This document shows, piece by piece, positions 3,096 to 19,730 of a DNA stretch of 64,000 nt. The notes under the pieces were generated by a model, which was not told the origin of the DNA, ran no database searches, and worked only from the letters and a program-made list of their open reading frames with translations. The translations under genes and the position numbers were made by a program. The DNA is from Diadema antillarum (taxonomy: Eukaryota): assembly GCF_040938485.1 (NCBI RefSeq), contig NW_027272223.1, positions 1 to 64,000 on the forward strand, given 5' to 3'. Position 1 is the stretch's first letter, and every line of letters begins with the position of its first letter.

Positions 3096-6000
3096 ATGAA
3101 GTGTAAGTTAGAAGTCTGTGATGCTCTCCGTCTATGGTATCTGATGATTACTCTTCACCTAGTGTTCGCTCTTGTTCCAGGCGTGGATGCAGCTGTCGAG
3201 CAATACAGACGACAGGTCACATTGGAGGTGAGGGTACTTTGGTTTGATTTGATTTGATTGATTTGGTTTGATTTTCGATTTCTTCTCCAAAGTATTATAA
3301 AACTGAAATACGCATATAGATAAATCATTAAAGATAATACGAGAGGAATCAATCTAATTGTGTTTATTCACATAGTTAATAACATGTAAGCAAACTTCAC
3401 AATAATTGACTTGTGTCGGCGTATATACTTGGTTCTCGTCCTAACTCTACAGGTAACCATGCATGTGTAATATCTAAATTCAGTATCGTATTTTTAAAGA
3501 CCATAATATCTCGTTGGGCTATTGTATACAGCGTTCTGAATTCTAAATGGAATAAATTCACTATCATTCTGATATGTGTAATATACTCCAAACGCATTAA
3601 AATCTATAAGTTTCTGATCCTGTTTGTTGTAATAATTCCTCCACAATATGCCCTTGGTCAATGTGTGCCTCTCGAACGTCTAATTGTCTTTAACATCAAT
3701 AGCGCTCACTGAAGGGGCAAGCAATTTCAATTCATTTACACTTTCTTTTCTTCCAACATAAGGTCGCACATAATACAAAGTATACCCTATTTTTGAAAAA
3801 TTATACTGTTTAACCATTTTTTAAGAAGTACATGTCATAGAGTATGTTACAAAATGATGTATGAATGATTGTGATGATTATAATGATGAGAGGAACAATG
3901 CCTACTGTGCAATAGTGAAAAAAAAAGATAATAATGGAGAAGAGTAAATCTATACCTCTGTAAGACGTGGATCACTCGAAAAGCAATAGATGTCATGCCA
4001 ACGATTATCCAAAATGTATCTATGAACATTTAGTATAGGTTATACGCCAGTAATAACTGATAAAGGGTAATATAAAAGCATAATACTATTTAGAGCTGTT
4101 GGACAATACTTTTTCTTTCTTTTTTTTTAAGAACAGAGGAAATACATTATACCTAAAATGAGATAACAACGTTACTCCACAGACGCTATTCATTGAGCAG
4201 TGTGCACCATAAAATACATCGACAAAAATAATACTTGCACAGATTATAAGAACACACAGTTAAACACACATACCCCCCCCCAAAAAAAAAAACAGCAACA
4301 AACAAACAAACAAACAAAAAGCACTTATAAACACAAGACGCAATATTGTAACAAGAAGAAAGAACATTTTTATATCACAACACAACGAAGAACAACGTGA
4401 AAAAAAGTCAGGAGCAGAGAAGAAAGAAATTGTGGCTTGTGAACATCCCATTCCGTTGTCACGGAGATGCAACATAGTGTCGTCAGACACTGACCACTGA
4501 ACAATTTGACCAGTTGGTTGCACACACTCAGGCCAGAACTTCCAAAAAAGCTCGTGCCCCAATTTGACCTGCCTCCGCTCAGGTCAACGAAGCAATCCCG
4601 ATCTTTCCAAGCTCAGAAAGGTGATCATAAACAGTGCTCCCGTGAACGGCGTTTTGAATCAACGTTTCAAAACACTGATTCTGAACATAAACACACCCTT
4701 ACATAGACTGTAGTCAGATCTCGGTTGTGATAGATCTTTGTCCACCAAGTGGTCGTTCAAGTCCGTGAGTACACCTGTCAGACAGTGATCAAGATAAAAA
4801 GACCTCATTCCGGAATAGTTCCAGGACAATTACCCCCTGGACAAGAAATTACCCCATATCCTTCCTCTGACCCTAACCCTCTTAATCCCGATCCTGAACC
4901 TAATCCTGACCCTAACCCAAACCCTAATCATATATGATCCTGAACCTAATCCTGTTTTCATTGAGCCTGTGGTGGAAAATGTTCGCTTGCGACGGGTAAA
5001 AAAAGAAAAAAAAATGAACCGTTTGATTGCTCTATAATAGAGCCATGATGATATATATACTTATGGGAGGCCAAAGGAATTTATTAGAATATATCTTTCT
5101 CCTTTTTTTTTTGGGGGGGGGGGGGCTTATTTATTGAAACTTACATTTCAGATCGAATAACTTCAAGAACCTTATAGTAGATCATACCTGTACCAGAAAA
5201 AAGAAGCAAATTTTAAGAGATCATGTGTGCAAATATTAACGCTGTAAAGGCCTACATAGCCAAGTCATCAACAGGCTGACGATGGCTGGTTATCTTTTGC
5301 GAAAATCATTTTGCCATTAGTATAGTCTTGGTTTGAAATATGGAGATTTCATTATCGAGATCATTGTGACTCAAAATCTTAATGAATTGAAAGTATACAC
5401 TCGATACATTGCGCTATTACTATGCATGCAGTAGGTCGATTGAGGATCGATCTCGCGCGAGCAGTTGAGGAACTGCTTCATGTTGTCGAATCCAATTTGA
5501 AGGAGTACGCCCTCTTGAGTGCTGATTATTACAGTGATCGCAACGAAGATCGTTTTCATGGATACTGAGTATAAACTTTCACTTTCATACACAGATAAAA
5601 TGATCATGAACGATAATATGTTGTTTACAGAACCAGCGCATACGGTAAAGACTCCAGCTTTTCCGCTTGGTCGTTTTCTCAAAATCTCCCGCTTTAACGT
5701 TTAGCTTCCTCACAAAATATGAAAAGCGAATAGAAAAGTTTGCACGTATTATACGCAAACGCTCACTTTCATGTCAGATAAAGATAGTATACAAATGATG
5801 CACAGGATAGAGTGCGTTAGTGTAGGCGTAAAGTGCACTCGAGGGTATTTACAATTGTGAAACATGCACGAGGCGAAGCCGAGTGCATGTTGCACTATAC
5901 ATTGTAAATGCCCGAGAGTGAGCTACGCCTCCACTAACGCCACGAAATAATCCTGTGCATCATTTGTTTTATAAAATGGGTCGAAAATTCGAAAACTAAC

Positions 6001-13953: not shown

Positions 13954-14083
13954 NNNNNNNNNNNNNNNNNNNNNNNNNNNNNNNNNNNNNNNNNNNNNNN
14001 NNNNNNNNNNNNNNNNNNNNNNNNNNNNNNNNNNNNNNNNNNNNNNNNNNNNNNNNNNNNNNNNNNNNNNNNNNNNNNNNNNN
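13954..14083. other. Assembly gap (130 N)
   Basis: Run of N next to the CCTAAC hexamer repeat. Confidence 0.98.
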
Positions 14084-14515: not shown

Positions 14516-15178
14516 TGTAGATTGCGGATGACAGGGATATATTCCTCAACCTAATCCTATCACTCACCGGTATTTATGCTGGGGATGTCCTGGGGATGTA
14601 ATTGTCCTGATACGCTCTGGAATTGTTTAATTACTGCTTTGGAATTTTTCATTGAGTCTGTAGTCGAAAGTCTTCTTTTGCGAAGGGTATGATCCGTTTC
14701 ATTGCCCCATAGAGCCAATGATGATATAATTTTAGGAGGACAAAGGAATTAATCAGAATTTATCATATTTTTTTTAACTTATTGAAGCTTGCATTTCATG
14801 TAACTTTAAAGAACATTTAAGGACCCCGCACCTCTACCAGAAAAAAAAAAAAATGATGGTCAGGAGCAAATTTTTAGAGATTTGATGTGTGCCAATATTA
14901 AGGCTGAACCAAACCATGTCATCAACAGGTTCAAGATCGCTGTAGTTAATCTGGTGGGGAGATTATTTTTGCTGTTATAGTATAGCCTTGTTTAGAAATG
15001 TGGTAATTTCATTATAGAGATCATTATCAACCAAAGTCTTTTCAATTTGAAAGTATATACTCGATGTATAGCAGTGCGTCGAGGATAGATCGCGCGAGAG
15101 CAGTTTTTGCGCGGCATTATCGTCAAATCAATTTGAAGGGGTGCACCCTCTATAATTTTCTTGAGTGCTGATATTACA

Positions 15179-16725
15179 GGGCTCACACGGGTAAATAATT
15201 CCCCATAGAGACGTGTGTTAAAATTCAAATTTCAAAAAATTCTGTAAAATAGCTGGGAGAAATGAGTTGTTTCATCTTCACTAACCTGAATAAGTGAGAT
15301 ATACCCTTTTATCCATCAGATTTCCAGGGTGGATTGTTCTGCTTTAATTCTGTCCAAGGGTCGGCAAAGCCAGACTACGAGTTCTTGTCACTCAAAAAAT
15401 CACCTATTTTCTGTACACGTACCCAATGAAATATAGTCCCCTCAAATTCCATCAGAGAAGCTTTCATCTTCCAACCAAAATGCAGTTTGTAGAGGAATCC
15501 ATATGTCTACAGCTATTCAGTTTTTTGCCGAACTACATCATTGATTTTTAATTAATTTTTTTCTTCATTTATTTTGGTGTCTTTGGTACGAATTTGTGAA
15601 GGGGTCTGGGACAGTCCATTTCATTTACAGGTGTGAGCCCTATAGTGGAGGTCATATTTCTTATTTGACTTTTTAACATCACAAATGTGTTTTTGGTGAT
15701 ATTTGCCATTACATCATATGAGAAATTACACATTCAAGGCTTATAAAGCTTTTCAAAGGGGACACTTTTGAAAATCATGGCCTTTGGGTTTTTTTTAATA
15801 CATTCTTGCAGTGTTGATCAGTTCTTCATAAGATAAATACATAGATGCAGGCAGTTATCCTTGATTATGGGGGTGTCATCATCACCTTATTGCCTACAAA
15901 GTACTTGAAGAGACTTTGTTTTGTCAAACAGACTAACTTTATGTATTTTGAGCTGTTTCAGTGGTAGCCAAAACAAAGAAATACATTAGAATAACACAGT
16001 CATTCCAAGTTGTGTGATACTGCTGACTGCTACGTACTAAGATCTAGTACCTGGTACCACAAGAACATAATAAGAAAACAAATTGTCGCAAGGCAGAGTG
16101 GGGGGGGGGTAGAGGAGAGGGGTAGGGGGTATGGAGGAGAAGGGGGAGGGAGGGAGGAAGAGATCTGACACAATACAAGACCAACATACACCAGCAGAGC
16201 TTGTATGGGATGTATACTTCCCATAGACTTGCATGTATTGCGTGCATTCTCTATAGGGCTCACACGGGTAAATAATTCCCCATAGAGACGTGTGTTAAAA
16301 TTCAAATTTCAAAAAAAAATTATGTAAAATAGATGGGAGAAATGAGGTGTTTCATCTTCACTAACCTGAATAAGTGAGATAATACCCTTTCATCCATCAG
16401 ATTTCCAGGGTGGGTTGTTCTGCTTTAATTCTGTCCAAGGGTCCGCAAAGCCAGACTACGAGTTCTTGTCACTCAAAAAATCACCTATTTTCCGCACACG
16501 TACGCAATGAAATATAGTCCCCTCAAATTCCATCAGAGAAGCTTTCATCTTCTAACCAAAATGCAGTTTGTAGAGGAATCCATACTCAATGTCTACAGCT
16601 ATTCAGTTTTTTGCCAAACTACATCATTGATCTTTAATTAATATTTTCTTCATTTATTTTGGTATCTTTGGTACGAATTTGTGAAGGGGTCTGGGACAGT
16701 CCATTTTATTTACAGGTGTGAGCCC
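15179..16725. mobile_element. Compound insertion: two direct copies of a ~465 bp MITE (15179-15640, 16256-16725) around a 615 bp spacer
   Basis: Each unit has GGGCTCACAC...GTGTGAGCCC termini. The outer flanks are TACA/TACA and the inner flanks TATA/TATA. The paralogous intron of copy 1 has a single TACA (5530-5533) with matching flanks. Confidence 0.8.
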
Positions 16726-18746
16726 TACAGTGATCGCAAGGAGGATCTTTTTCATGGATATAAGCTTTCACTTTATTATAAATACAGATAAAATAACTGC
16801 AAGAACAATATGTTTACAGAACCAGCGCATACTGCAGAGACTTCAGGTCTTCCGCGTTAAGGACATTCTCTCAAAATCTCCAGCTTAACGTTAGCTTTCT
16901 CACAAAATATGAATATCATACAGAATAGTTTGCACGTATAGTACACTAACGCTCACTTTCATGGCAGAGGATCACAAATATTATAACATGACCTGCATTT
17001 ATTTGTGAGCGCTATGGAAAATAAGCTGATTGAACGATAAATGAGGTTGATATCCCGTTTTGATCGCACTTTTATGTTACTGCAACTAATCAAAATAATG
17101 TAAAGGTCAGAAATAGGATAAGCAGCAATATTAATGTTGATAAAAGAATGGTGGGATTTTTTTTTTTCCTGCGGAAAGACTGAAGTCACTTGTTTTCTTA
17201 TCTTATCTTTTTTTCTTTTCTGTTTTGTTTGCCTATTTGTTTGTTTGTTTGTTTGTTTGTTTTTCCTTTTGCTATTACCTGTACTGTCGGCAGAGCAATT
17301 ATCCGCGAAGTGTCGGCGGAGCAAATGTCGCGGAGTATTGTCGTGGGGTATTTTTGTCGCAATTTTCGGAGTTATGTTGTCGGCGGTGCTACAGCACCTT
17401 CGCTGTCTTTCTTTATACAACGATTATCGGGTTAGTTTTTTTTTTCTCTCTCTCTTCCCGTCTCCTCTCTATATGCAGGAATGCACAGCGGGCTCCCCTG
17501 GTCCTCCTGGACCACCGGGGCCGCCCGGGGAGCAAGGCGAGCCAGGTGCCCCGAGCAGCGTGTCCAAGAACTGGAGGCAGTGTTCGTGGTGGCAGATTAA
17601 TGACGGTCAAGATTCCGGCCAAGTCAAGGTGAGGCGACCACAACGTAACTAGAAAACAAACAAAAACTGCTGAATTCTTTGTACTTCCTTTATGCGTGAC
17701 GTCACGAAATGTTGTAGTCTTCTCTCCCAGCGTTGCCGGCACCGAAAATTTGAAAATTCATAACTTTTGAACGGATCGTTCCATTTTCCTCAAACTGTAC
17801 TGATGTGTAGGCCTCTTAATATTGTTACATTCACTCATTGATAAAACCTGGGTTTTTATTCTCGTTGAACACAGACATGTAGTTTCACCAAGGAGTATTC
17901 CGACACGTACCTATACGTGGCTTGGTCTGGCAACCTCCGGGTCGCAACAAACAACCCGGCCTGTTGTCGGTGGTACTTCACTTTCAACAACGCGGAATGC
18001 TCCAACCCCAATCGGATTGAAGCAGTCACGTACGCCGCTGGATACTCGAGCTACAACCTTCACCGTCCCCGAGTTTTGATGGGTGAGCTATATTGTCAAA
18101 CAAGTCAAAAATGTACCGTAAAACTCCATCCCATAATGCATGCTTCAAGCGACGTTATAACATAAAACAGAACAACGAAAGTTTCTTTAAAATCCGGGAA
18201 AATACTCAGAAAACGACCGTATCATGGATTCTATTTTTTTTTTTTCGTGCGATTCAAAGGCAGGGTAAGAAATTTAATTATCCTGAATTTGACTACCTTT
18301 TTTATTTACGTTTAAGTTTTTATCATTTATTAACTATATTTTTTTGCACAATTCTTGGTTTGTTTGTTTGCCAGGCTATTGTAAAGGGATCAGTGCCGGG
18401 AGTATCACCGTTGGGTTCTGGGTCGGAGCTTGCAGTGGTTATGGGAACTATGACTGCGCCACTGGTTGGAATAGCGCAAGCCACATTATGATTGAAGAAG
18501 TCACTCCATCACCCTATGATTAGAAACACGGACAAACGAACAAACACAAAAGGAAGGATCGAGAAAATAATTATGAGATATCGTAATAGTGGTTTATCTA
18601 TAAACGTAGAGGGCGTCAATGGAGTGAGCACACAATTTTTTGCTTGTCTCAAAAAGGCATCTAATTTTTCCCAAATCGAGTCAAAAGGACACATTCTGTG
18701 GAACTCACGTAAAGCCTGCTTTGAAACATCGACGTAAACTTTCAAA

Positions 18747-19730
18747 ATGGACCAGCAGCTTCAGAAAAGACCAAAGAGGCTGGCCGCCACGAAACCGAAA
18801 AACTACGGCACAACTCACACCATCCGCAAGTCGCCTGTTACTAACTCGAAAAGCCCGCCAAATTCAAATACGTTGCCCGGGTCTGCTGCCGTCGCAAGCA
18901 CCTGTAGCCCTGGAGCTGAACCAACGCCCACACCTACGGCGCAGCAGGAAGACGGCGCTTCGTACATCGCTGAACCTGATATTCAAGACAACATGGCCGC
19001 CATGGACGACTCTGAAGTCCCGCTCGCACCACCTGATATCTCCGACTCCATCCTGTCTCCTATGTCCCTGAAGCTTGATGCATTCTTCACATCTACAACA
19101 GAAAAATTTGAACGCATGATCAGAAACGCGGTGGATAGCTTCATTTCAAAGCTCAGTGACTTGGAAGGAAAAATTGGTGCCTCCTTGGAGTTTGAGCGGG
19201 AAAGAATCGACAACCTGCAAACAAATCAGTCCAAGCTGGAGGAGAGAATGGAGAAAATGGAAAGAGAAATGGAAGAAATGAGAGCCAACGTGAGCAGAAA
19301 CGCAGCAGCTGCAAACAAGAGTGAGCGGTTCCTGAGGAGGAATAACTTCCGTCTTGTTGGAATACAGGAGGTTCCATTGGGTCAACGGGAAAATTGTGTC
19401 GACATCGTAGAGGAAGTCCTGCGAGAGAAATTTGATATGAGCTGCAAGGTGGAAAGAGCCCACAGAGATGGACGACGATCCGAAGGCAAGCCGAGACATA
19501 TCCTGGTCAAGTTGCTCTCCTACAGGCAGAAAGTAGATGTGATGAAACGTGCGCGTGAAGTCCTGAAAAACGAGCCATATTTTATGGTTGATGATCTCAC
19601 CCCAAGCGACCTACAGGAAAAACAGAAACATGTCAAGAAAGTCCAAGACCTGTACAAACAAGGTACTAAACTTCGATTTTTTGCAGGAAAGTGGCGCCAA
19701 ACCGGTGGTGTCCCATTTAATTTTGAGTGA
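18747..19730 (+). CDS. LINE ORF1 protein (coiled coil + L1-type RRM/CTD, 327 aa)
   Basis: Heptad-rich segment followed by RRNNFRLVGIQE..VERAHR..PRHILVKL..DDLT, the motif series of L1/transposase-22-like ORF1p. Confidence 0.85.
   Translation: MDQQLQKRPKRLAATKPKNYGTTHTIRKSPVTNSKSPPNSNTLPGSAAVASTCSPGAEPTPTPTAQQEDGASYIAEPDIQDNMAAMDDSEVPLAPPDISDSILSPMSLKLDAFFTSTTEKFERMIRNAVDSFISKLSDLEGKIGASLEFERERIDNLQTNQSKLEERMEKMEREMEEMRANVSRNAAAANKSERFLRRNNFRLVGIQEVPLGQRENCVDIVEEVLREKFDMSCKVERAHRDGRRSEGKPRHILVKLLSYRQKVDVMKRAREVLKNEPYFMVDDLTPSDLQEKQKHVKKVQDLYKQGTKLRFFAGKWRQTGGVPFNFE

What the first reader, a model, noticed from the sequence alone, without database searches (positions are those of the whole stretch)
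15179..16725. Compound transposon: two MITEs in direct orientation carrying 615 bp of cargo, with an empty site in the paralogue
Seen: TACA-[MITE 462 bp]-TATA..spacer..TATA-[MITE 470 bp]-TACA. The homologous intron of copy 1 reads GAGTGCTGATTAT-TACA-GTGATCGCAA with a single TACA, so the whole 1.55 kb is flanked by one 4 bp duplication. The two units are similar but not identical. Inference: either the outer ends moved together as a bacterial-style composite transposon, or a circle holding one MITE in a TATA site recombined into a resident MITE (a cointegrate), which would also explain the matching inner TATA/TATA. GGG termini with a 4 bp TSD are compatible with Sola2-like elements (tentative).
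Basis: partly seen in the sequence, partly recalled or inferred. Interest (0 to 1): 0.7.

Follow-up and report, generated by a model that had tools for sequence, protein, structure and literature searches.

The report
Two-MITE composite transposon, satellite-forming family
The 1.55-kb insert is real and is one ordinary copy of a family with several hundred copies in this (reportedly sea-urchin) genome, in which two direct copies of a ~465-bp inverted-repeat element bracket a fixed 607-bp core and the whole block moves as one DNA transposon; the same two modules also build tandem arrays, so the "cargo" is not captured host DNA.

Summary
Observation confirmed. The structure is TACA, M1 (15179-15640), TATA, S (15645-16251), TATA, M2 (16256-16725), TACA. 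The diverged paralogue holds one TACA at 5530-5533.

The spacer S is a family module, not unique cargo. Whole-assembly counts are about 534 M-to-S junctions, 80 S-to-S junctions, about 25 M-to-M junctions and at least 2,300 M ends. The assembly seems to hold both haplotypes, so haploid numbers are roughly half. Modules always lie head to tail, joined by 4 bp, nearly always TATA. Forms seen: M-S-M (commonest), M-S-S-S-M, (M-S')n-M, M-M, solo M.

In 18 of 23 complete blocks the outer 4-bp flanks match exactly.

Two features are not explained by simple cut-and-paste. The two M copies of a block are each other's nearest relatives (24 of 30 comparisons). Arrays may start with S but almost never end with it.

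No transposase partner was found, and Sola2 membership is unsupported. This is a new variant of a known kind (macrotransposon, or MITE carrying a satellite). The scan noted another satellite-carrying TIR element elsewhere in this genome.

The parts
15175..15178 (+). Left copy of the 4-bp target-site duplication (TACA)
   Evidence: The paralogue has a single TACA at 5530-5533.
15179..15640 (+). M1, left copy of the ~465-bp non-coding TIR element (MITE). It carries a private 5-bp deletion relative to the 467-bp family norm.
   Evidence: There are 1388 left ends of this type in the assembly.
15179..15196 (+). Left terminal inverted repeat of M1
15623..15640 (-). Right terminal inverted repeat of M1 (inner end)
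15641..15644 (.). Inner linker TATA between M1 and S. It is constant across the family.
15645..16251 (+). S, the 607-bp core module. It is non-coding, has no TIR and shows no similarity to M. It is also the monomer of tandem arrays elsewhere in the genome.
16100..16164 (+). Poly-G / polypurine tract inside S. Its length varies between copies.
16252..16255 (.). Inner linker TATA between S and M2
16256..16725 (+). M2, right copy of the TIR element
16256..16273 (+). Left terminal inverted repeat of M2 (inner end)
16708..16725 (-). Right terminal inverted repeat of M2 (outer end)
16726..16729 (+). Right copy of the 4-bp target-site duplication (TACA)
5530..5533 (+). Empty target site (single TACA) in the older paralogous gene copy

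Best explanation
The insert is one copy of a non-autonomous DNA-transposon family whose usual mobile unit is M-TATA-S-TATA-M. Two direct copies of a ~465-bp TIR element (M) flank a fixed 607-bp core (S). A transposase supplied in trans (not identified) uses the left TIR of the first M and the right TIR of the last M. It inserts the whole block and duplicates 4 bp of target, with consensus TNNA and TATA as the favourite; here the target was TACA. The insertion happened after the host gene duplicated. It predates the split between the two assembled versions of this locus (C1335 and C33, 1.3-1.9% apart in the M copies). The inner TATA linkers look like relics of the two founding M insertions and are inherited by all copies. 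Because every M has both TIRs, any pair of M copies in a block can define a mobile unit. Unequal exchange or repair between the repeated modules then gives solo M, M-M, S-S and long (M-S)n arrays, which is the birth of a satellite. What is shown: the anatomy, the family, the variable matching duplications and the empty site. What is inferred: movement as a unit, the DDE-type enzyme, and how the arrays grow. What is open: why the two M copies of a block are near-identical when it forms, and why arrays end in M but may begin with S.
For: S has at least 82 full-length matches, all next to M or S where the context is visible. Whole-assembly junction counts are M-to-S 534, S-to-S 80 and M-to-M about 25, with backwards-read controls at 0. 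M left ends number 1388, and right ends of an older subfamily number about 930. In an unselected sample of 12 M-to-S junctions, 8 were M-S-M or M-S''-M and one was M-S-S-S-M. The outer 4-bp flanks are identical in 18 of 23 complete blocks, nine of them non-TATA and all different. The paralogue has an empty site. M has 18-bp TIRs. There is no ORF, no Rfam match and no M/S similarity. In the young S' subfamily, 19 M copies are identical across five loci that have different module numbers. The unit order of the C811 block matches the last units of the long C11 array. M and S are also high-copy in runs of a second organism.
Against: No autonomous element or transposase was found, so the enzyme class is inferred only from the TIRs and the duplication. 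A composite that simply copied itself should carry inherited left-specific and right-specific differences. None exists. Instead, the two M copies of a block are mutual nearest relatives in 24 of 30 comparisons over 15 loci. For the window copy itself this signal is weak: the partner ranks 4th-5th of 29, and L-R distance is 3.3% against 2.4-2.6% to the nearest other copy. S-M blocks without a left M exist at unique loci (28 of 252 S starts; 8 of 9 fetched are unique host DNA), whereas only 3 of 183 S ends are followed by a base other than the G that begins M or S (Fisher p = 9e-5). A pure two-end cut-and-paste model does not predict that polarity. Five of 23 blocks lack a perfect duplication.
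Confidence: 0.7

Rival explanations
1. Blocks form through an extrachromosomal or array intermediate that holds a single M template. For example, a 1.08-kb M+S circle pops out by recombination between the two direct M copies, is amplified as a head-to-tail concatemer, and is then cut out and integrated at outer TIRs. Alternatively, blocks are excised from long (M-S)n master arrays that have been homogenised. Either route makes both terminal M copies identical when the block forms.
For: The L and R copies of one block are mutual nearest relatives in 24 of 30 comparisons, and no position is specific to L or to R. Module number varies between loci whose M copies are identical. (M-S)n arrays of about 1085-bp period exist on C4, C40 and C44. 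The S-to-S junction reads exactly like a closed S+TATA circle junction. Arrays show polarity: they always end in M.
Against: No circle or concatemer was observed, and no eukaryotic TIR transposon is known (to my knowledge) to use such a route. Gene conversion between two repeats 0.6 kb apart could mimic the L=R signal. For the window copy the L=R signal is weak.
Confidence: 0.17
2. Cointegrate made in place. A solo M first inserted at TACA. Later a circle carrying S and another M recombined into it by homology.
For: Solo M copies with their own duplications exist (C31). Many isolated left ends appear. Outer duplications would be preserved.
Against: This needs two events at each of hundreds of loci. 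It predicts that L and R are reciprocal chimeras of two unrelated copies, whereas partners are usually nearest relatives. It also does not explain the constant head-to-tail order.
Confidence: 0.06
3. LTR-like miniature retroelement (TRIM-like). M would be the terminal direct repeat, S the internal domain, and solo M the equivalent of a solo LTR.
For: The terminal repeats are near-identical when a block forms. There is a 4-bp duplication. Arrays have n+1 M copies and n S copies. S contains a polypurine tract.
Against: M ends in GGG...CCC with an 18-bp TIR, not TG...CA. The polypurine tract lies about 90 bp from M2, and the 13 bases next to M2 are pyrimidine-rich. The linkers on both sides are the same 4 bp as the favourite target, as expected of old duplications. 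S-S and M-M junctions exist. No reverse-transcriptase partner was sought.
Confidence: 0.04
4. Assembly artefact or local tandem duplication: a single MITE was collapsed or expanded, or the spacer is host DNA that was deleted from copy 1.
For: The region is repetitive, and only contig-level read data could be laid on it.
Against: The same structure sits in the independently assembled C33 copy. M1 and M2 differ at 3.3% of sites plus indels. S is a genome-wide repeat. Both outer junctions are bridged by contigs of run X1.
Confidence: 0.02

Closest known systems
Macrotransposons / composite transposons: maize Ac/Ds pairs in direct orientation (named from my own knowledge; the papers listed were not read), and bacterial composites bounded by two MITEs (TIME-COMPs, abstract of PMC13367494)
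   Same: Two complete copies of one TIR element in direct orientation flank a foreign segment. The outermost ends act together, and the whole block is flanked by one target duplication.
   Different: Here the composite is not a one-off rearrangement. It is a successful family of several hundred copies with a fixed core and fixed 4-bp linkers. Its two end copies are near-identical when each block forms.
Tandem-repeat-containing MITEs and MITE-derived satellites: DTC84 of Donax trunculus (PMC3879986), miDNA4 and Xstir of Xenopus (as reviewed in PMC12628747 and PMC9659126); pearl/CvA of oysters appears only in a table of PMC9659126
   Same: A non-autonomous TIR element carries an internal unit that is present once or as a short array. 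Copy number varies between insertions. Longer arrays behave as satellite DNA.
   Different: Here each flank is a complete element with both TIRs, the repeat unit is 607-1050 bp, and M itself takes part in the arrays (M-S-M-S-M, M-M).
Double insertion / TE dimers as seeds of satellites (McGurk and Barbash 2018, as summarised in PMC12628747)
   Same: There is a strong target preference (TATA), element dimers are joined by exactly one target duplication, and the dimers expand into arrays.
   Different: Orientation is almost always head to tail, and a second, non-TIR module is interleaved. Repeated insertion into a palindromic TATA alone does not predict either feature.
Sola2 DNA transposons
   Same: 4-bp target duplication and short TIRs.
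   Different: Sola2 duplications in the literature are AWWT, ATAT, AAAT or ATTT (PMC3627910). Here they are TNNA. No Sola2 transposase has been linked to these TIRs.

Membership tests
MITE (non-autonomous TIR DNA transposon), applied to module M | Terminal inverted repeats at both ends | tested here: met
   18 bp, 16 of 18 complementary, in both M copies.
MITE (non-autonomous TIR DNA transposon), applied to module M | Target-site duplication of fixed length, with an empty site | tested here: met
   4 bp, exact in 18 of 23 blocks. The paralogous empty site has one TACA. The one solo M inspected (C31) has TAAA/TATA, a 3-of-4 match.
MITE (non-autonomous TIR DNA transposon), applied to module M | Small, non-coding, high copy number | tested here: met
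   462-470 bp. No ORF above 44 aa lies wholly within M1 or M2. 1388 plus about 930 ends in the assembly.
MITE (non-autonomous TIR DNA transposon), applied to module M | Autonomous partner sharing the TIRs | tested here: inconclusive
   Pattern searches that exclude M-type subterminal bases gave only mutated or subfamily M ends, with no pair of ends kilobases apart.
Composite transposon / macrotransposon | Two copies of one element flank a segment, and the block has one duplication at its outer ends | tested here: met
   Window: TACA/TACA. Other loci: TTCA, CTTA, TGAA and TATA several times for M-S-M; TCCA, CCTA, TAGA and TGTA for longer blocks.
Composite transposon / macrotransposon | Independent insertions of the same block at unrelated loci | tested here: met
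   At least 10 independent M-S-M or M-S''-M loci, after removing haplotig pairs.
Composite transposon / macrotransposon | Observed mobilisation through the outer ends | not testable with these tools
   This needs a transposition assay, or a polymorphic new insertion with a known donor.
Sola2 superfamily | 4-bp AT-rich duplication (AWWT-type) | tested here: not met
   The length is met. The sequence is TNNA (TACA, TCCA, CCTA, TAGA, TGAA and others), against AWWT/ATAT/AAAT in PMC3627910.
Sola2 superfamily | Sola2 DDE transposase, or terminal bases 1-11 matching a classified Sola2 family (the Repbase rule, PMC4455052) | not testable with these tools
   No Repbase library was available, and no transposase has been linked to these TIRs.
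LTR retrotransposon / TRIM | Terminal repeats begin with TG and end with CA | tested here: not met
   M begins GGGCTC and ends GAGCCC.
LTR retrotransposon / TRIM | Primer-binding site next to the 5' repeat and polypurine tract abutting the 3' repeat | tested here: not met
   The polypurine tract ends about 90 bp before M2. The bases abutting M2 are GCGTGCATTCTC. The PBS was not compared with host tRNAs.
LTR retrotransposon / TRIM | The two terminal repeats are identical at insertion | tested here: met
   Partners are mutual nearest relatives in 24 of 30 comparisons, with d(L,R) of 0-4.3%. Gene conversion or homogenised donors would give the same result.
Helitron / Helentron non-autonomous elements with tandem repeats | No target duplication; 5' TC and 3' CTRR or a hairpin; insertion at AT or TT | tested here: not met
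   There are 4-bp duplications and symmetric 18-bp TIRs.

The most novel reading that the evidence does not exclude
The M/S blocks are made by a polar, replicative route that is new for a eukaryotic TIR transposon. Recombination between the two direct M copies releases an M+S circle. Synthesis primed from a transposase nick at the right TIR rolls out head-to-tail concatemers. The transposase then integrates any stretch that ends in a right TIR. This would explain three things at once: the LTR-like identity of the two end copies, the variable module number among otherwise identical copies, and the rule that arrays may begin with S but end with M. It would be a direct mechanism by which a DNA transposon manufactures satellite DNA.
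Probability: 0.12. Interest if true: 0.75.

Novelty: new variant of a known kind. Interest (0 to 1): 0.45.

Why it matters
Composite (macro)transposons in eukaryotes are mostly known as rare rearrangements, and MITE-borne satellites as short internal repeats. Here a two-MITE composite has become the main propagating form of its family and is caught at every stage from single block to multi-kilobase array, with young copies that are still identical across loci. That makes it a clean natural system for asking how transposons seed satellite DNA. It also raises the question of how a DNA transposon keeps its two end copies identical. For annotation it matters too, because such blocks can be mistaken for LTR elements, gene-carrying transposons or mis-assemblies.

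Tried and rejected
Unique host cargo is rejected. S has hundreds of copies, and nearly all are adjacent to M or S.

An S satellite that existed independently and was merely invaded by M finds no support. In every region inspected, S arrays were bounded by M, or on the left by unique DNA plus TATA, and never ended at an arbitrary phase, apart from a few truncated units.

S as a transposon of its own is rejected. It has no TIR, and after the 4-bp linker its 3' end is followed 180 of 183 times by the G that begins M or S.

S derived from M is rejected. There is no similarity beyond 8-18-nt chance matches.

Structured RNA or coding content is rejected. There is no Rfam match at E up to 1, and only short ORFs, at most 91 aa in the low-complexity tract.

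A reading with a TA duplication and CAGGG ends (Tc1/mariner-like) is rejected. Non-TA 4-mers such as TCCA, CCTA and CTTA are duplicated exactly.

Apparent "tail-to-tail" M pairs suggested by the palindromic junction pattern turned out to be direct M-M dimers of an older subfamily.

Searches for the autonomous partner by TIR pattern found nothing. Literature searches with the TIR strings returned no transposon paper among the 10 titles listed (82 papers hold one of the strings). Look-ups of the original Sola paper failed because it is not held.

Only Logan contigs, not raw reads, could be laid on the region, so neither an empty allele nor a long-read span could be assessed.

Full report
**What is in the window.**
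- M1 (15179-15640, 462 bp) and M2 (16256-16725, 470 bp) are direct copies. They are 94.7% identical with small indels, and differ at 3.3% of sites.
- Each copy ends in an 18-bp inverted repeat, GGGCTCACACGGGTAAAT against GGGCTCACACCTGTAAAT. The four ends are the only matches in the 64 kb, where 0.01 are expected by chance.
- Between the copies lie TATA, 607 bp (S, 15645-16251) and TATA.
- Outside them lie TACA (15175-15178) and TACA (16726-16729).

**The empty site.**
The older paralogue of the host gene holds the empty site. The left flank aligns to 4955-5533 and the right flank to 5530-5778, so the two alignments overlap by the single TACA at 5530-5533. These flanks are only 65-78% identical. 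The insertion is therefore much younger than the gene duplication, and a clean deletion from copy 1 is not a reasonable alternative. The host gene looks collagen-triple-helix/CTHRC1-like, judging from an exon near 17500-17650. I did not pursue this further.

**Is it an assembly artefact?**
Only assembled contigs of public runs could be laid on the region, not raw long reads. In run X1 one contig runs from the left flank into M1 (14600-15203). Another runs from M2 into the right flank (16703-17184) without a single difference. Stronger evidence comes from contig C33. It carries the same M-S-M with the same flanks and the same TACA, and is 97.4% identical over 4.07 kb. Other loci also come in such pairs: C645/C63, C962/C591 and C11/C1842. 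The 1.75-Gb assembly therefore appears to hold both haplotypes. All copy numbers below are roughly twice the haploid values.

**The spacer is not cargo.**
A search of the whole assembly with S gave at least 82 strong matches out of 989 candidates. I mapped M and S on the fetched loci and merged overlapping loci into 29 regions. This showed one rule. M and S units always lie head to tail, separated by exactly 4 bp, which is almost always TATA. The forms seen are:
- M-S-M (C1335=C33, C388, C645=C63, C962=C591);
- M-S-S-s-M (C1006);
- long S arrays with an M at the end (C316, C74);
- (M-S')n-M, where S' is an 835-bp variant of S (C1116 with n=3, C811 with n=2, C477 as M-S'-S'-M, and a 13-kb array on C11);
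- M-S''-M, where S'' is about 1030 bp (C1420, C699, C288);
- M-M dimers (C7, C78);
- a solo M (C31).

Pattern counts over the whole assembly, all with backwards-read controls at 0, are:

| Feature counted | Count |
|---|---|
| M-to-S junctions | 534 |
| S-to-S junctions | 80 |
| M-to-M junctions | about 25 |
| M left ends | 1388 |
| Right ends of an older M subfamily | about 930 |

Twelve M-to-S junctions taken in contig order, not by similarity, gave eight M-S-M or M-S''-M blocks, one M-S-S-S-M and three disrupted copies. The window's structure is therefore the commonest form of an abundant family. M and S are non-coding, match no Rfam family and are unrelated to each other. Both are also at very high depth in runs of a second organism.

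**Whole blocks carry one target duplication.**
In 18 of 23 independent complete blocks, the 4 bp outside the first M equal the 4 bp outside the last M. Nine of these pairs are TATA. The other nine are all different: TACA, TTCA, CTTA, TCCA, CCTA, TGTA, TAGA, TTTA and TGAA. The consensus is TNNA, a palindromic preference typical of a dimeric transposase or integrase. It holds for blocks of any length, up to the 13-kb array on C11.

**How it most likely works.**
M has all the marks of a MITE. Because every M carries both TIRs, the left end of one M and the right end of any later M can be used together. The block then moves as a macrotransposon. The constant inner TATA linkers have the same length and sequence as the favourite target. 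They are best read as the duplications left by the two founding M insertions, inherited ever since.

Solo M, M-M, S-S and longer arrays can then arise by unequal exchange between the repeated modules. They can also arise by loss of an internal module between two TATA copies. I infer these steps; they are not shown.

The young S' subfamily shows how fast this goes. Nineteen M copies are identical across five loci whose module strings all differ. Their S' units differ only by a few SNPs and by poly-G length. The two units of the C811 block are of the same variant type as the last two units of the C11 array.

**Two observations that the simple model does not explain.**

*The two M copies of a block resemble each other too closely.* They behave like the two LTRs of a retroelement. 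Over 15 independent loci the partner is the nearest of 28 other copies in 24 of 30 comparisons (chance probability about 1e-29). The distance d(L,R) runs from 0 to 4.3%. No alignment column separates left copies from right copies. A composite that copied itself faithfully should instead accumulate left-specific and right-specific differences. So one of three things holds:
- donors are homogenised arrays;
- both ends are templated from one M, for example by a circle or a concatemer;
- gene conversion acts within blocks.

For the window copy itself the signal is weak. Its L-R distance is 3.3%, against 2.4-2.6% to the nearest other copies.

*The arrays are polar.* The exact 5' end of S is preceded by something other than M or S in 28 of 252 cases. 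Eight of nine such sites I fetched are unique host DNA followed by TATA and S. Six of the eight then continue as S-TATA-M-flank. In contrast, after the 4-bp linker the 3' end of S is followed 180 of 183 times by the G that begins M or S (Fisher p = 9e-5). Blocks can therefore start with S but practically always end with M. The M copies of these S-M elements are scattered among ordinary blocks in the tree, so the form probably arises repeatedly. Excision of either M, microhomology deletion and gap repair are all symmetric, and none of them predicts this. The poly-G/polypurine tract near the 3' part of S, or an unequal role of the two TIRs, are possible causes. I could not test either.

**Rivals.**
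- *Cointegrate with a foreign circle.* This requires two events per locus and predicts unrelated, chimeric end copies. That prediction is contradicted.
- *LTR/TRIM-like retroelement.* This fits the identical end copies, the 4-bp duplication and the n+1/n arrays. It fails on the termini (GGG...CCC with an 18-bp TIR, not TG...CA) and on the polypurine tract, which lies 90 bp from M2. It also fails on the linkers, which equal the preferred target, and on the existence of S-S and M-M junctions.
- *Helitron or Helentron.* These are excluded by the duplications and by the symmetric TIRs.
- *Mis-assembly.* This is addressed above.

**Comparison with what is known.**
The closest kinds are three.
- Macrotransposons formed by two elements in direct orientation (maize Ac/Ds; named from my own knowledge, since the papers listed were not read). 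Bacterial composites bounded by two MITEs are a parallel (abstract).
- MITEs that carry internal tandem repeats and seed satellites: DTC84 (abstract of PMC3879986), miDNA4 and Xstir (reviewed in PMC9659126 and PMC12628747). Pearl/CvA is listed only in a table of PMC9659126.
- Transposon dimers as satellite seeds (McGurk and Barbash, as summarised).

This family differs in four respects. The flanks are complete elements. The composite itself is the successful propagating unit. M takes part in the arrays. The end copies are near-identical when each block forms.

**Superfamily.**
Sola2 membership is not supported. Its published duplications are AWWT-type (PMC3627910), whereas here the consensus is TNNA. 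No transposase could be tied to these TIRs. The superfamily stays open.

**Earlier notes of the scan.**
One note calls this genome a sea urchin (s1-234804); I did not verify that. Another describes a different TIR-bounded element that carries a satellite in this same genome (s1-220781). TE-borne satellites therefore seem to recur here.

**Verdict.**
However, the element is a routine member of a large modular family and not a unique capture event. Its interest lies at the family level: a two-MITE composite that makes satellites, with LTR-like end identity and an unexplained polarity.

Noticed in passing
G000 contig pairs C1335/C33, C645/C63, C962/C591, C11/C1842, C316/C74: The same insertions with the same flanks occur twice at 97.4-99.8% identity in the three pairs measured (C1335/C33, C645/C63, C962/C591). 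The 1.75-Gb assembly therefore appears to contain both haplotypes or many haplotigs, and repeat counts are about double the haploid values.
   Followed up: partly
loci L071-L087 (for example C303:232390-234700): S-TATA-M elements without a left M sit in unique DNA, with TATA on the left in 26 of 28 cases. The mirror form, M-S without a right M, is almost absent (3 of 183).
   Followed up: partly
L071/L080 (C303:~232880 and ~234620): One S-M element sits in a perfect 16-bp palindromic target, GTGCCG-TATA-CGGCAC.
   Followed up: no
window 16100-16164 and the S' units of C11, C1116, C811 and C477: Poly-G runs inside S vary in length between otherwise identical units. The tract could form G-quadruplexes and may be a replication obstacle.
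   Followed up: no
window 13954-14083: This is a run of N, part of 319 N in the window (a masked stretch or a gap).
   Followed up: no
window 17500-17650 (+): An ORF piece reads GPPGPPGPPGEQGEPG followed by NWRQCSW, like collagen triple helix repeat-containing (CTHRC1-like) proteins. This is probably an exon of the tandemly duplicated host gene.
   Followed up: no
window 18747-19730 (+): A 327-aa ORF has a coiled-coil-like middle.
   Followed up: no
C415:804497-808102 and C538:777367-780974: In a haplotig pair, a 1081-bp unrelated insert lies between a truncated M and S. It is probably a secondary insertion into a block.
   Followed up: no
C74:2300735-2321588 and C316:2549981-2565683: The left flank plus the start of an M-S array is repeated about 13 kb (C74) or about 8 kb (C316) apart on the same contig. 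A larger segmental duplication therefore includes the array.
   Followed up: no
runs X3, X4, X20, X21 (organism B): M and S reach very high summed depth in a second organism whose contigs cover the unique flanks only in two short stretches. The family is therefore shared between related species.
   Followed up: no
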